From NCBI GenBank assembly GCA_977017575.1, contig CDRNVI010000041.1, positions 1-64,000 of the forward strand: 64,000 bases of DNA, read 5' to 3'. Each line of letters starts with the position of its first letter. The stretch's first letter is position 1. Shown here piece after piece: positions 18,130-48,247 of the stretch. The notes under the pieces were generated by a model. The model saw only the letters and a program-made list of their open reading frames with translations. It was not told the DNA's origin and searched no databases. Source of the DNA: Paramoeba atlantica. Lineage: Eukaryota > Protista > Discosea. The position numbers and the translations under genes are program-made.

Positions 18130-19513
18130 ATGAGTTTTAATTTATTTTCCTCACAGGAAAGCACTGGGATGCGTCGCGCAGGTAAAGTACGCGGATCTTT
18201 CTTACCGGAGGAATATGACTTGTCTCTTTTCATTCAGAACATTCCGAAGCGTCATCGATCGTGGAGTACAAACGTACCCGCCTGTGAGTGGAGTGGTGTT
18301 AAGTGTGATCCAACCATGCGTACTGTAACAGACCTGAACTGGAATCGTATGAAGCTCACAGGGTCTGTTGTTTGGTCACGACTTCCCCGACGGGTTGAAA
18401 TATTAGATTTATCAGAAAATATCTTGAGTGGACCTCTATTTTTAGATCAACTCCCTACAACGCTTCACACTCTACATATTTTTCATAACATTCTCACCGG
18501 AGGACTAGAATGTCAGACATTGCATGGAGGGGCGCGCAATATTTATCTTGGTGACAACCAGTTTGAAGGAGAGGTAGATCTTACCTCTCTTCCTGTCACT
18601 TTACTTCGATTTAGATAAAGATACAGTTTCTGTACCTTGTTGGTACATTTTCCCTTTAGTTCATCTTTTCTTTCCCCGGCAACGGGCATAATCTTACTGT
18701 TTTATATGCCCGTTGCCGGCCGGCACTAAGGCCGAAACTGTCCCTCTTTCTCGGAGAAGTAGGGGACGCGCTTCCACCCCATCACCCCTCCCCGGCTCAC
18801 TCCTTGAGTGGGTTTTCTTCCCTCCCCGGCTTTCTTCCCTTCGCGCCCTTTTCTCCCCGGGGAGCCATGCGCCATGGTGGCCTCCCTTGAGGACCACTGG
18901 GCGTGGCTCTGCCTCGTCTTATCGCGAGGCAGCGGTCGGTTGCAGTGCGCCCCTCCGGCTGCGTAAAGAGGTGGTGAGTTGCCTGGACCACCTCTACCGA
19001 CTGGGACCGAGTCGGTTGCAGTGCGCCCCTCCGGCTGCGTAAAGAGAGGGCGAGTTGCCTGGACCCCCTCTACCGACAGAGTCCGAGCTAAACCCCCTTG
19101 GTGCGACATCCGTCAATACGGATTGTGCCGATGATATCGGCTGCGCATTAAGGGCTGTATCTCTGCGCCAACGAGCGCATGAACATCAAAAATTAAGTAA
19201 TAATGACTTTTCTGGCGAAGTAAAATTGCATCTCTTGCCTCCATCTATGATTTCGCTCTCTTTGGGGCATAATCATTTCACTGGGCGCATTTATCTGTAC
19301 TCCCTTCCAATTCAATTGGAATTTCTCTATTTACAAAGCAATGAATTTTATGGGAATGTCGATTTAAGCACTCTCCCTGTTGCTTTAAGAGGGCTTAATT
19401 TAGATGACAACCGTTTCGATGGTTTTGAGTGGGGCACACTGGTAGCTCAAGAATCTACTCAAGTTGTTGTTGGAACGCAGCGAGGAAAAGAATTAAAAAT
19501 GACCACTGCATAA
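18130..19513 (+). pseudogene. LRR family protein 5, interrupted by the SL-headed element
   Basis: Removing 18616-19192 joins TTT AGA to TTA AGT AAT AAT and restores a 268-aa ORF (LPVTLLRFR-LSNNDFSG). Confidence 0.85.
18616..19192 (+). mobile_element. spliced-leader-headed structured non-coding element, copy 1 (577 bp)
   Basis: Starts TAAAGATACAGTTTCTGTACCTTGTTG|GTA (SL exon nt 13-39 plus donor) and ends CATCAAAAA; near-identical copy at 47447-48022. Confidence 0.9.
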
Positions 19514-22787: not shown

Positions 22788-24365
22788 ATGACCTCACCCG
22801 ACACCCCACCGACTTCCTACGACCTCCTGGTCATCGGCGGCGGCTCCGGGGGCATTGCCTGCGCCCGGAGGGCAGCCGCCCTGGGCGCCCACGTCGGCCT
22901 CTGTGACTTCGTCGCCCCCTCCCCCACCCTTGGCACCTCCTGGGGTCTCGGCGGGACCTGTGTGAATGTGGGCTGTATCCCAAAGAAACTCATGCACAAT
23001 GCCGCACGGCTGGGAGGGGAGGCCCACCACGCGGCCTGCGCATTCGGCTGGGGCAACGACGCCTCCCCCCCGACCCCCCAGGCCCACACCTGGGACGTGC
23101 TGCGGCAAAATGTACTCCTGCACATCAAATCGTTAAATTTTGGGTATAATGTCGAGCTGCGAAAAGCGGGGGTGAAATATCACAACGCGCTGGCCTCCAT
23201 ACGAAATGTAAAAAGCGGCGCCCCCTACGAGATTGCGTTACGGAGTAAAGCCGGGGAGGCCTCGACGGTGTGGGCGGCTCGGGTTGTGCTGGCGATGGGG
23301 GGACGTCCGACGCTCCCCGCGGAGTGTCCTGGGGCGCGGGCGTATGGTATCACCTCGGATGATTTGTTTCGGCTAGCGCGGGACCCCGGGAGGTGCTGCG
23401 TGGTGGGGGCGTCCTATGTGGCGCTGGAGTGTGCGGGATTCCTGCGGGGGTTGGGGAAGGAAGTGGTGGTGCTGATCCGGTCGATTCCGCTACGGGGGTA
23501 TGACCAGCAGATGGCGCAAAAGATCGTGGAGTTTATGGAGACCGTTGAGGGGGTGCGATTTGTACGTCAAGCGGTGCCGGTGTCGGTAGAAGTGGTGAAA
23601 CCGGAAGCGGGAAATTCTACTCCAGATGAGATTGCTGGTCCTGAACGTCGAAAAGTAACTTGGCGTCATGCCGATGGTACCACCGGAGCTGAGATATTTG
23701 ATACGGTCTTGTTCGCCATTGGACGCACCCCGGAGACAACTAAGGTAGGATTGCCCCTGGAGGCCGTAGACGTAAAAAATGGAAAAGTACTCGTTGATTC
23801 TGTAGATCAAGTCGTGGGAGTCCATAACGTGTACGCAATTGGAGATATCGCGCAAGGGGGGCTGGAGCTCACTCCGGTCGCCATACGTCAAGGACAGCTT
23901 CTCGCAGATCGTCTTTTTGGAGGCCGTACGGAAGCGCTTTGTTTTGAGAAGGTCCCCACAACAGTCTTTACCCCCTTGGAATATGGTTGTGTTGGGCTAA
24001 GTGAGGAACGGGCAACGGAAATCTACGGCGAAGATGCTATAGAAGTCTATCACAGCTCATTTACCCCCCTGGAGTGGACATTGGTACATTCCTACCCGGC
24101 TAACACGTGTTACATTAAAATAATCACTACGCGCCCCCTTCGGGGCACTGGTGACCACGGTGAACGTGTAGTTGGGTTTCATATTCTGTCCCCCAACGCA
24201 GGTGAGATCACACAAGGAGTAGCGGTGGCCTTGTGTGCTAATGCAACGAAACAGCATTTTGACACTGCTTTAGGTATTCATCCCACGGTGGCTGAGGAAA
24301 TGATTGGCTTGCATGTTACGAAGCGTTCCGGGAAGGATCCGGAAAAATCGGGTTGCTGAGGTTAA
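22788..24365 (+). CDS. TXNRD: high-Mr (animal-type) thioredoxin reductase, selenoprotein ending Gly-Cys-Sec-Gly
   Basis: GGGSGG FAD motif, GGTCVNVGCIPKK, GASYVALECAGF, GIHPT; end reads GGT TGC TGA(24357-24359) GGT TAA, paralleling mammalian TKRSG...GCUG. Confidence 0.92.
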
Positions 24366-46829: not shown

Positions 46830-47011
46830 TATATACATTGTATCCCTGTCAGATAATCTGGTATAATCACTGTTAGATAGGGGAAACCGAAGCTAATTTT
46901 CAACGGGCAATTTACTTGTACTACGGTTTGATTCTGCAATTCTCTTGGTTCTACGGCTTACTGCAATAGACATTTTCTCATTTTTCTCATACGCGTGAAA
47001 AAAGTAGGTTG

Positions 47012-48247
47012 ATGGATGAGTGCGAGGAGCTGCCAACTCGACGGGGGCGCGTCACGGGTAATCTCCCACAAGAAATTACACTCATGCGGGTGATAGCAGA
47101 AATAGAAAACCCTCACTACAGCTGGTCCGCAGAAACTCCGGCAAGTAAATGGGACGGAGTGTCTTGTGAATCGACGGGTGAAATTTACAAAATCTCGTGG
47201 AAAGGATTCGCGTTTCGTGGCAAACTGCGCTGGGAACTTTTGGCCGAGAAAGCTTGTATCGTAGAGGTTACCGCTGGGTGGCGGTGTAGCCGATACTTTT
47301 CCAGCAACTTCCTGACTGGAGTTTTACCCACGGCGAGCCTTCCGAATAGGTTACATACCTTGGACGCTAGTTATGGTACAGTGATGGGACACGTCGACCT
47401 ATGTACTCTCCCTCCTGAACTGTTGTCTCTGAGGAACTGTTGTCTCTAAAGATACAGTTTCTGTACCTTGTTGGTACATTTTCCCTTTAGTTCATCTTTT
47501 CTTTCCCCGGCAACGGGCATAATCTTACTGTTTTATATGCCCGTTGCCGGCCGGCACTAAGGCCGAAACTGTCCCTCTTTCTCGGCGAAGTAGGGGACGC
47601 GCTTCCACCCCATCACCCCTCCCCGGCTCACTCCTTGAGTGGGTTTTCTTCCCTCCCCGGCTTTCTTCCCTTCGCGCCCTTTTCTTCCCGGGGAGCCATG
47701 CGCCATGGTGGCCTCCCTTGAGGACCACTGGGCGTGGCTCTGCCTCGCAATATCGCGAGGCAGCGGTCGGTTGCAGTGCGCCCCTCCGGCTGCGTAAAGA
47801 GGTGGTGAGTTGCCTGGACCACCTCTACCGACTAGGACCGAGTCGGTTGCAGTGCGCCCCTCCGGCTGCGTAAAGAGAGGGCGAGTTGCCTGGACCCCCT
47901 CTACCGACAGAGTCCGAGCTAAACCCCCTTGGTGCGACATCCGTCAATACGGATTGTGCCGATGATATCGGCTGTCGCATCAAGGGCTGTATCTCTGCGC
48001 CAACGAGCGCATGAACATCAAAATGAATGAAAATTACCTCGAAGGGCCCCTCGATTTTACAAAATTGCCAGCGAGCTTACTTTTTTTGTCACTTACAAGC
48101 TTCTCCTGTAAGGTAAACTATGGAGTAGTTGACTTTACTGCTTTGCCGAAAAAATTAACAAGTATACTCTTAATTGGTTCCAAGGTCATACCGAAGGACG
48201 GCATTATACCCGATATTGTCAAAATGAGCTCAGGATATTCACTTTGA
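47012..48247 (+). pseudogene. LRR family protein 11, interrupted by the SL-headed element
   Basis: Removing 47435-48022 joins CTG AGG to ATG AAT GAA AAT (LPPELLSLR-MNENYLEG); RGRVTGNLPQE motif. Confidence 0.85.
47447..48022 (+). mobile_element. spliced-leader-headed structured non-coding element, copy 2 (576 bp)
   Basis: Same first nucleotide as copy 1; about 8 differences plus A-tract length; preceded by a 12-nt copy of upstream target sequence. Confidence 0.9.

What the first reader, a model, noticed from the sequence alone, without database searches (positions are those of the whole stretch)
18616..19192. Spliced-leader-headed mobile non-coding element (candidate new SINE-like family)
Seen: a 577-bp insert present twice (second copy 47447-48022, about 8 differences). 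Both begin at the same base with TAAAGATACAGTTTCTGTACCTTGTTG|GTAC and end in CATC plus 3-5 A. There is no credible ORF, no TIR and no regular TSD. Known: the kinetoplastid 39-nt SL exon has the core ACAGTTTCTGTAC at nt 20-32 and ends TTG before a GTA donor; the insert matches this spacing, giving nt 13-39. Its TGTACC/GGTACA hairpin is the exon-donor pairing of SL RNA stem-loop I. CRE/SLACS/CZAR retrotransposons insert at SL nt 11/12. Inference: a recently mobile SL-gene-derived retroposon, or a non-autonomous partner of a CRE-type element, that has escaped the SL array. I know of no described kinetoplastid SINE of this type.
Basis: partly seen in the sequence, partly recalled or inferred. Interest (0 to 1): 0.92.

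Follow-up and report, generated by a model that had tools for sequence, protein, structure and literature searches.

The report
Spliced-leader-headed retroposon targeting LRR genes
This is a young, non-coding jumping element of a kinetoplastid-type protist that starts with the last 27-28 letters of the cell's own spliced leader, is most likely copied by R2-like retrotransposons, and lands at one fixed position of leucine-rich-repeat coding sequence; it is not a runaway spliced-leader gene.

Summary
The 577/578-bp element sits at 18615-19192 and 47447-48022, about 99% identical. It is a dispersed family: at least 40 near-identical copies, and 120 exact head matches genome-wide.

The organism's real SL gene lies in 2.56-kb repeats with 5S rRNA. 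Its 38-nt exon matches the element's head at nt 11/12-38. After the exon, the element shares only GTA with the SL intron, so it is not derived from the SL gene. No SL gene is interrupted after nt 11.

The element is a non-autonomous partner of R2-like LINEs with a restriction-like endonuclease. These LINEs carry the same truncated SL head and the same 3' module (AUCUCU, a 4-bp stem with compensatory changes, then AUGAUAA). They also use the same target.

About a third of copies lie in LRR genes, always in sense. The 3' junction is 8-9 nt before the conserved Asn codon.

Public reads hold the exact empty site of copy 1: 578 nt replaced one C, with no duplication. The insertion is therefore recent and polymorphic.

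Why heads start at SL nt 10-12 is unexplained.

This scan already found the same system on other pieces of this genome.

The parts
18615..19192 (+). Copy 1 of the non-coding retroposon (subfamily A), 578 nt, inserted in sense into an LRR gene
   Evidence: Boundaries come from the empty-site contig, which joins 18614 to 19193 with a single C between them.
18615..18642 (+). SL relic: nt 11-38 of the 38-nt spliced-leader exon
   Evidence: Identical to the exon of the SL RNA genes in the 2.56-kb SL/5S repeats. The next bases, GTAC at 18643-18646, share only GTA with the SL intron.
18676..18719 (+). 14-bp perfect hairpin of the conserved 5' module (about 290 nt shared by subfamilies A-D)
   Evidence: RNAalifold on 12 copies extends it to 16 pairs, two of which carry compensatory changes: C-G to A-U in 5 sequences and C-G to U-A in 4.
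18935..19077 (+). Two tandem 67-nt modules (18935-19001 and 19011-19077), each a predicted hairpin; present in subfamilies A and B only
   Evidence: Read from the sequence and from the BLAST self-hits at element nt 320-396 and 396-472. The whole element folds with z = -7.4.
19159..19192 (+). 3' terminal module: AUCUCU, a 4-bp stem-loop, AUGAACA, then UCAAAAA
   Evidence: Shared with the 3' ends of R2-like LINEs. All cells pair and 3 of 4 pairs show compensatory changes. The covariance model hits only SINE and R2-like LINE 3' ends in 189 kb.
18130..18614 (+). 5' part of the host LRR gene, cut off by a TAA inside the SL relic
   Evidence: ORF 18130-18618. Pfam LRRNT_2.
19193..19513 (+). 3' part of the host LRR gene. 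With the empty-site C restored it reads ..RFSLSNNDFSGEV.. in frame
   Evidence: LRR_1.
47447..48022 (+). Copy 2 of the retroposon (subfamily A). Its SL relic at 47447-47473 covers SL nt 12-38
   Evidence: The 3' module is hit by model R1 at 47991-48017.
47434..47446 (+). 13-nt filler at the 5' junction of copy 2; it repeats the upstream target sequence at 47417-47429
   Evidence: Read from the sequence. Similar complex 5' junctions occur in L005, L013, L022, L023, L028, L075 and L100.
47009..47433 (+). 5' part of the second host LRR gene
   Evidence: ORF 47009-47449, ending ..DLCTLPPELLSLRNCCL*.
48023..48247 (+). 3' part of the second host LRR gene (..MNENYLEGPLDFTKLPASL..). The Asn codon lies 8-9 nt after the junction

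Best explanation
The element is a non-autonomous, non-coding retroposon that is mobilised in trans by R2-like LINEs. These LINEs encode a reverse transcriptase, a zinc knuckle and a restriction-like endonuclease.

Proposed mechanism (the mechanism itself is inferred; only the features below are shown):
1. The LINE protein recognises LRR coding DNA, probably through the conserved Asn-x-Phe/Leu-x-Gly codons downstream.
2. It nicks about 9 nt upstream of the Asn codon.
3. It reverse-transcribes an RNA that it recognises by a 3' terminal module (AUCUCU, short stem-loop, AUGAUAA).
4. It joins the 5' end by imprecise, microhomology-prone template switching.

Shown here: LINE and element share the truncated SL head, the 3' module and the target register, and there is no target duplication.

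The 27-28 nt SL head came from the SL exon at the RNA level. An ancestral or current RNA intermediate was trans-spliced. The head was not copied from an SL gene.

It is not settled whether the head is renewed in each cycle or inherited as a selected 5' signal. It is also not explained why this LINE clade and its partner stop at SL nt 10-12.
For: SL exon, not SL gene:
- SL genes read AACTTTAACGATAAAGATACAGTTTCTGTACCTTGTTG|GTATGAGAAGC. The element follows the exon to its last base and then diverges.
- The variant subfamily (L028, L029) has the SL fused 17 nt further in. It skips exactly GTACATTTTCCCTTTAG, which is a pyrimidine tract plus AG. That is what re-trans-splicing of a genomic copy would give.
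- The genome holds 811 dispersed SL cores. In the about 20 non-element loci sampled, the core heads diverse 5'-UTR-like or LINE sequences, often preceded by an A-run.

LINE partner:
- LINE-A (L073, L074), LINE-B (L075, L080, L081) and LINE-C (L045) start at SL nt 9-12 in five of six heads (nt 17 in L081), like the element.
- L080:690-5276 is an intact 1528-aa ORF. It has RVT_1, and its zinc knuckle and PD..E..K nuclease align to solved R2 proteins. Its named relatives are R2-type.
- The 3' module is shared. In alignment A2 all 36 cells pair, 3 of 4 pairs have double changes, and 0 of 500 shuffles reach this.
- Model R1 finds the module only at SINE and R2-like LINE 3' ends. These include a fourth LINE family that was not used to build the model and has a further compensatory stem, ACAG/CTGT.

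Target:
- 11 of 32 independent sites lie in LRR ORFs, all in sense and none antisense. The background rate in the window is 2.9% (P about 1e-9).
- In 9 of those 11, the 3' junction is 8-9 nt before the Asn codon.
- LINE-A in L074 has the same offset. In L073 the element lies exactly between the LINE-A 3' end and the LRR half-site.

Recent insertion:
- An empty allele with identical flanks exists, with a 1-nt target loss and no TSD.
- 27 copies are at least 97% identical.
Against: - No RNA data exist. The one possible RNA run had no coverage, so no transcript, 5' end or cap has been seen.
- No SL-less source locus with AG in front of GTACATTTTCC exists in the assembly. Genomic copies have TTG, not AG, at the SL/body junction, so they cannot be re-spliced at the same point.
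- None of about 50 copies carries a complete SL. Poly(A)-type LINEs in the same genome do, so renewal by trans-splicing in every cycle is not shown.
- Outside the roughly 30-nt terminal module, the element's 3' region is not significantly similar to the LINE-A or LINE-B 3' UTRs.
- About two thirds of sites are not in LRR genes, so the specificity is a preference, not absolute.
Confidence: 0.75

Rival explanations
1. The SL relic was captured once, long ago, and has since been inherited through DNA as a selected 5' cis-signal of this LINE/SINE lineage. It might serve protein binding, translation or 5'-end definition. It is not renewed by trans-splicing in each cycle. Heads shorten slightly at each integration.
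For: No copy has a complete SL. Starts cluster at nt 10-12 in all subfamilies and in three LINE families. The genomic junction is TTG, not AG, and no SL-less master locus exists. The relic is identical to the present SL in LINE families whose nuclease domains are only 48-57% identical, which implies constraint. Sequences downstream of the relic are complementary to it: 11 nt in LINE-B (p<0.002) and 8 nt in LINE-C and SINE-A.
Against: Some copies have longer heads than most others: from nt 6 in L003 and nt 8 in L083, and at least 6 loci carry AACGATAAAG. The L028/L029 variant looks freshly re-spliced. No function for the relic has been shown.
Confidence: 0.35
2. One reading: a retroposon derived from the SL RNA gene itself (exon plus intron start), or a partner of a CRE/SLACS/CZAR-type element, that escaped from the SL array.
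For: The head equals SL exon nt 11/12-38 and is followed by GTA, as in the gene. [quoted passage not shown]
Against: The intron (GTATGAGAAGCTTCG...) and the element (GTACATTTTCCC...) share nothing beyond GTA. LINE-A and LINE-B have AATT or TTTT after the relic, not GT. No SL gene is interrupted after nt 11. The LINE partners resemble R2 more than any named CRE or SLACS protein in the search.
Confidence: 0.03
3. An intron-like element (an 'introner') that is spliced out of LRR mRNAs and is therefore tolerated in coding sequence.
For: It lies in sense orientation at a fixed codon register inside ORFs. The relic ends in a 5' splice-site-like TTG|GTA.
Against: The ends are AT..AA, not GT..AG. An in-frame TAA lies in the relic of copy 1. 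Two thirds of copies lie outside genes, in microsatellites or in other elements. An intact empty allele coexists with the insertion.
Confidence: 0.03
4. Assembly artefact or segmental duplication rather than transposition.
For: Logan contigs do not span the filled junctions.
Against: All but one pair of the sampled copies have unrelated flanks on many contigs. Summed contig depth over the element is 35-120 times that of the flanks in three runs. An exact empty site exists.
Confidence: 0.01

Closest known systems
R2 SIDEs: short internally deleted, non-autonomous R2 derivatives of Drosophila (from my own knowledge, Eickbush and Eickbush 2012)
   Same: Non-coding; mobilised by a site-specific RLE LINE; shares the partner's 3' RT-recognition end, its 5' end and its target site; no poly(A) requirement; no regular TSD.
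   Different: Here the body is not an internal deletion of the LINE, because only the SL relic and the roughly 30-nt 3' module are shared. The target is a protein-coding repeat, not rDNA. The 5' end is an SL relic, not a self-cleaving ribozyme; none was detected by Rfam.
CRE clade (CRE1/2, SLACS, CZAR) of kinetoplastids
   Same: RLE-type LINEs of kinetoplastids that are linked with the spliced leader (PMC12278014).
   Different: CRE elements sit inside SL RNA genes and usually carry poly(A). These elements carry the SL at their own 5' end, insert in LRR genes, end in AUGAUAA, and leave SL genes intact after nt 11. No non-autonomous CRE partner is mentioned in that survey.
RIME/NARTc/SIDER: non-autonomous partners of ingi/L1Tc
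   Same: Short non-coding retroposons of kinetoplastids that share their ends with an autonomous LINE.
   Different: Those depend on APE-type LINEs, carry the Pr77 5' signature and poly(A) tails, and make TSDs (PMC12278014). None of these features is present here.
SL-relic retrogenes of dinoflagellates (from my own knowledge, Slamovits and Keeling 2008)
   Same: A DNA copy of the SL exon at the 5' end shows passage through a trans-spliced RNA.
   Different: Those are retrocopies of host mRNAs, often carrying stacked relics. Here the SL is a constant, truncated head of a transposon family and its LINE partners.

Membership tests
SL RNA gene-derived retroposon | SL exon followed by SL intron sequence | tested here: not met
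   The gene intron reads GTATGAGAAGCTTCGAACTC and the element reads GTACATTTTCCCTTTAG; only GTA is shared.
SL RNA gene-derived retroposon | Head identical to the organism's own SL exon | tested here: met
   Exon nt 11/12-38 match exactly.
CRE/SLACS/CZAR system | Insertion inside SL RNA genes at a fixed position (nt 11/12) | tested here: not met
   Copies lie in LRR genes, microsatellites and other elements. There are 0 SL genes with a non-SL base after nt 11.
CRE/SLACS/CZAR system | Autonomous partner with RT and restriction-like endonuclease | tested here: met
   The L080 ORF has RVT_1 plus a CCHC knuckle and a PD..E..K motif aligned to R2 structures. Its closest named relatives are R2-type, not CRE.
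R2-type non-autonomous element (SIDE-like) | No conserved ORF | tested here: met
   Frames are not conserved between subfamilies and have no Pfam match.
R2-type non-autonomous element (SIDE-like) | 3' end shared with the autonomous LINE | tested here: met
   Alignment A2 and model R1.
R2-type non-autonomous element (SIDE-like) | Same target site as the LINE | tested here: met
   Same LRR register: 8-9 nt before the Asn codon for the element and 9 nt for LINE-A in L074. The LINE-B copies L079 and L080 also lie in LRR ORFs, about 7-10 nt before an Asn codon.
R2-type non-autonomous element (SIDE-like) | No TSD, or a small target deletion | tested here: met
   The empty site shows that 1 nt was lost and none duplicated. 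This rests on one copy only.
R2-type non-autonomous element (SIDE-like) | Derived from the LINE by internal deletion | tested here: not met
   No significant similarity to LINE-A or LINE-B outside the SL relic and the terminal module.
R2-type non-autonomous element (SIDE-like) | Mobilised by the LINE protein | not testable with these tools
   Needs a biochemical or genetic assay.
Classical SINE (Pol III; tRNA, 7SL or 5S head) | Head related to a small Pol III RNA | tested here: not met
   No Rfam family reaches its gathering score, and only chance-level hits appear at E up to 10.
Processed retrocopy of a trans-spliced mRNA | SL joined exactly at the exon end | tested here: met
   also the alternative junction after an AG in L028 and L029.
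Processed retrocopy of a trans-spliced mRNA | Long poly(A) tail, TSD and an identifiable source gene | tested here: not met
   Tails are A2-10, mostly A4. There is no TSD and no source locus.

The most novel reading that the evidence does not exclude
An R2-like LINE/SINE system whose endonuclease is aimed at a codon register of a protein repeat (the LxxLxLxxNxFxG unit of a large LRR gene family) rather than at rDNA or SL genes. In this reading the truncated SL relic is a required 5' signal, trimmed at SL nt 10-12. By recollection, that is where CRE/SLACS/CZAR elements enter SL genes. If so, 'carrying the SL' and 'targeting the SL gene' would be two states of one ancestral protein-SL interaction.
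Probability: 0.15. Interest if true: 0.85.

Novelty: new variant of a known kind. Interest (0 to 1): 0.62.

Why it matters
- It gives a DNA record that retroelement RNAs of a kinetoplastid pass through, or once passed through, trans-splicing.
- In the trypanosomatid mobilome survey I read, non-autonomous partners are described only for ingi-type LINEs; this element would be one for an RLE-type LINE in a kinetoplastid.
- It shows a site preference, precise to the nucleotide, for a protein-coding repeat. Insertions break LRR genes while an intact allele persists, so the system may shape a large surface or receptor-like gene family.
- The shared 3' module and the fixed head limit at SL nt 10-12 give concrete handles for R2-type biochemistry in a new lineage.

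Tried and rejected
- Rfam on the window and on the element: no SL, tRNA, 5S, 7SL or ribozyme family. An HDV-like 5' ribozyme was considered but has no support.
- Search for an unspliced master locus (AG before GTACATTTTCC): the single hit is unrelated.
- Search for SL genes interrupted after nt 11: none.
- RNA evidence: no run on record as RNA holds the element, and the one possible RNA run laid nothing. Expression is therefore untested.
- Primary similarity of the element's last 130 nt to the LINE 3' UTRs: not above shuffled controls. Only the terminal module is shared.
- The idea that SL nt 11/12 mimics the LRR target: a comparison by eye showed only weak resemblance, so I did not pursue it.
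- Paper searches for an SL-headed SINE or for this SL sequence: nothing found.
Target statistics therefore rest on 32 sites.
- The species was not identified. The SL/5S linkage fits bodonid-type arrays, which I know of only through a cited title (Santana et al. 2001, in the reference list of PMC2621209).

Full report
**Observation**

The two inserts are real. Copy 1 is at 18616-19192 and copy 2 at 47447-48022/3. Both start with TAAAGATACAGTTTCTGTACCTTGTTG followed by GTAC and end with CATC plus A4-5. They differ at about 8 positions. The SL core occurs nowhere else in the window, where 0.08 matches are expected by chance.

The window is contig 41 of a 45.7-Mb assembly. All long ORFs lie on the + strand, as in a kinetoplastid polycistron. 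The element is a dispersed family:
- at least 40 full-length copies at 93-100% identity, out of 524 first-look candidates;
- 120 exact matches of the head 24-mer.

**The real spliced leader**

The SL core occurs 811 times in the genome. Tandem 2.56-kb repeats on contigs 97, 107, 11 and 74 carry a full leader followed by a GT intron, and each repeat also holds a 5S rRNA gene.

The exon is AACTTTAACGATAAAGATACAGTTTCTGTACCTTGTTG, 38 nt. I infer its first base from retrocopies that reach A2 or C3. The intron starts GTATGAGAAGCTTCG.

The element therefore matches exon nt 11/12-38 exactly and shares only GTA with the intron. It is not a copy of the SL gene. No SL gene is interrupted after nt 11.

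In the about 20 non-element SL-core loci I sampled, the core heads diverse sequences. These include LINEs that carry a complete SL directly behind an A-run. SL-headed retro-copies are thus a general feature of this genome.

**Anatomy and subfamilies**

Fifty copies were examined. Four subfamilies, A to D, share the following:
- the SL relic;
- a 5' module of about 290 nt that contains a hairpin of 14 perfect base pairs, extended to 16 pairs in the consensus fold, with compensatory changes;
- a 3' end.

Their middles differ. The window copies belong to subfamily A, whose RNA is predicted to be highly structured (z = -7.4).

Open frames are not conserved between subfamilies and have no Pfam match. 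Tails are short, mostly A4.

**The autonomous partner**

A clade of LINEs also begins with a truncated SL relic, at nt 9-12 in five of the six heads examined. I call the families LINE-A (L073, L074), LINE-B (L075, L080, L081) and LINE-C (L045).

L080 carries an intact 1528-aa ORF. It has a reverse transcriptase domain. Its C-terminal zinc knuckle and PD..E..K nuclease align to solved R2 proteins, and its named homologues are R2-type. Near-identical copies exist elsewhere in the genome, some with long open frames.

A different LINE lineage (L076, L078) has the complete SL and poly(A). It shares only 27% identity with L080 in the RT core.

The element and the R2-like LINEs end in the same module: AUCUCU, a 4-bp stem, a loop, then AUGAUAA. 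The stem changes in a compensatory way between families: GCGC/GCGC, GCAC/GUGC, GUAG/CUAC, CCUU/AAGG.
- All 36 cells pair, and 3 of 4 pairs show double changes.
- No shuffle out of 500 reaches this.
- The structure was chosen from these same sequences, which inflates such counts.

As an independent check, a covariance model of the module was run over 189 kb. It hit only the 3' ends of element copies and of R2-like LINEs. Among the hits was a fourth LINE family that was not used to build the model and has yet another paired stem, ACAG/CUGU. That LINE also shares an upstream hairpin, with loop UCGUAUG, with subfamilies C and D.

**Target**

Both window copies split LRR genes that carry LRRNT_2 and LRR_1 domains.
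- Of 32 independent subfamily-A sites, 11 have an LRR ORF on the right flank in sense, and none in antisense. The background rate is 2.9% even in this LRR-rich window (P about 1e-9).
- In 9 of those 11, the 3' junction lies 8-9 nt before the Asn codon of LxxLxLxxNxFxG.
- LINE-A in L074 has the same offset. The LINE-B copies L079 and L080 also lie in LRR ORFs, about 7-10 nt before an Asn codon.
- In L073 the element lies exactly between the LINE-A 3' end and the LRR half-site.
- Tandem element-element arrays, and 12-nt abortive copies right after a full copy, also occur.

This pattern fits recognition of sequence downstream of the nick, with repeated use of the same site.

**Empty site**

In runs X1 and X3 a contig joins 18614 to 19193 with a single C between them. 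Its flanks carry 0-2 mismatches. This allele reads ..cga ttt agC tta agt aat aat.., an intact LRR frame. So 578 nt replaced one base, with no duplication, and the insertion is hemizygous or polymorphic.

The first inserted base is SL nt 11. The target G before it can pair with nt 10, a 1-nt microhomology.

**The 5' end**

Heads start at nt 10-12 in most copies, with a range of 6-17. Among the subfamily-A copies, 19 of the 27 that begin at or before nt 12 extend at least one matching base beyond nt 12. About 30% would be expected from chance flank matches. The template therefore reaches at least nt 10.

Junctions are often complex. They carry short repeats of upstream target DNA and extra pieces that again start near nt 11 (copy 2 at 47434-47446; L005, L013, L023, L075, L100).

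None of about 50 copies has a complete SL, although poly(A)-type LINEs in the same genome do.

Genomic copies have TTG, not AG, at the SL/body junction, and no SL-less source locus exists. On the other hand, the L028/L029 variant has the SL fused just behind an internal pyrimidine tract plus AG, which looks like re-trans-splicing.

I therefore hold that the head came from trans-spliced RNA. I cannot decide whether it is renewed in each cycle or inherited under selection. The limit at nt 10-12 remains unexplained.

**Comparison and verdict**

The element works like an R2 SIDE or a RIME/NARTc-type partner. It is not an internal deletion of its LINE, it is not in SL genes, and it is not a Pol III SINE.

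The SL-gene origin and the escape from the SL array do not.

Earlier agents of this scan reached the same LINE/SINE picture on other pieces of this genome. Here I tested these independently, and showed the register statistics, the empty site, the SL gene comparison and the covariance-model check.

Noticed in passing
L052:690-1030 (G000 contig 107; the same in L051, L053, L056): Every 2.56-kb SL RNA/5S rRNA repeat unit holds an antisense, headless, diverged relative of the element next to a (GA)n run. It lacks the duplicated 67-nt modules and ends ..GCGTATGATAAACAA. It is probably an old insertion spread through the array by concerted evolution.
   Followed up: partly
G000 contig 1, e.g. L031/L077 (C1:9700-15000), L076, L078: Another LINE lineage has a complete SL directly behind poly(A) tails. 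There is also a 5.09-kb tandem array in which an SL copy sits between two copies of the same 5' UTR segment. The genome has 811 SL cores and 1851 first-look RT candidates in 45.7 Mb.
   Followed up: partly
L045 (C2:374400-374800) and L016 (C12:565268-568842): A third R2-like LINE family starts and ends inside (GT)n/(TG)n microsatellite. A subfamily-A element copy lies in the same (TG)n run, 169 nt after that LINE's ORF. This suggests a second target class.
   Followed up: no
L075, L080, L081 5' UTRs; window 18619-18626 with 19153-19160: Sequence after the SL relic is complementary to the relic. LINE-B has a perfect 11-nt complement of SL nt 15-25 (p<0.002). LINE-C and the element have 8 nt. 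In the element, AGAUACAG can also pair with CUGUAUCU just before the 3' module, giving a 5'-3' panhandle in the minimum-energy fold.
   Followed up: partly
L047 (C2:552850-553300): A near-perfect palindrome is made of an inverted SL copy joined to a direct SL copy. It looks like a snap-back product of reverse transcription.
   Followed up: no
L080:690-5276, ORF residues about 215-235, 315-335 and 490-510: The N-terminal third of the LINE-B protein has three repeats of a Cys/His motif (PC.H.C..K..C.H.CCK) with no Pfam match. It is a candidate DNA- or RNA-binding module for target or SL recognition.
   Followed up: no
window 18255-18546: Public runs show two haplotype contigs at similar depth that differ at 4-6 positions per 120-140 nt in the LRR gene next to the insert. 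This indicates high heterozygosity or very close paralogues.
   Followed up: no
window 22788-24359: A 523-aa pyridine nucleotide-disulphide oxidoreductase is far closer to animal thioredoxin/thioredoxin-glutathione reductases (E about 1e-143) than to trypanothione reductases (E about 1e-52).
   Followed up: no
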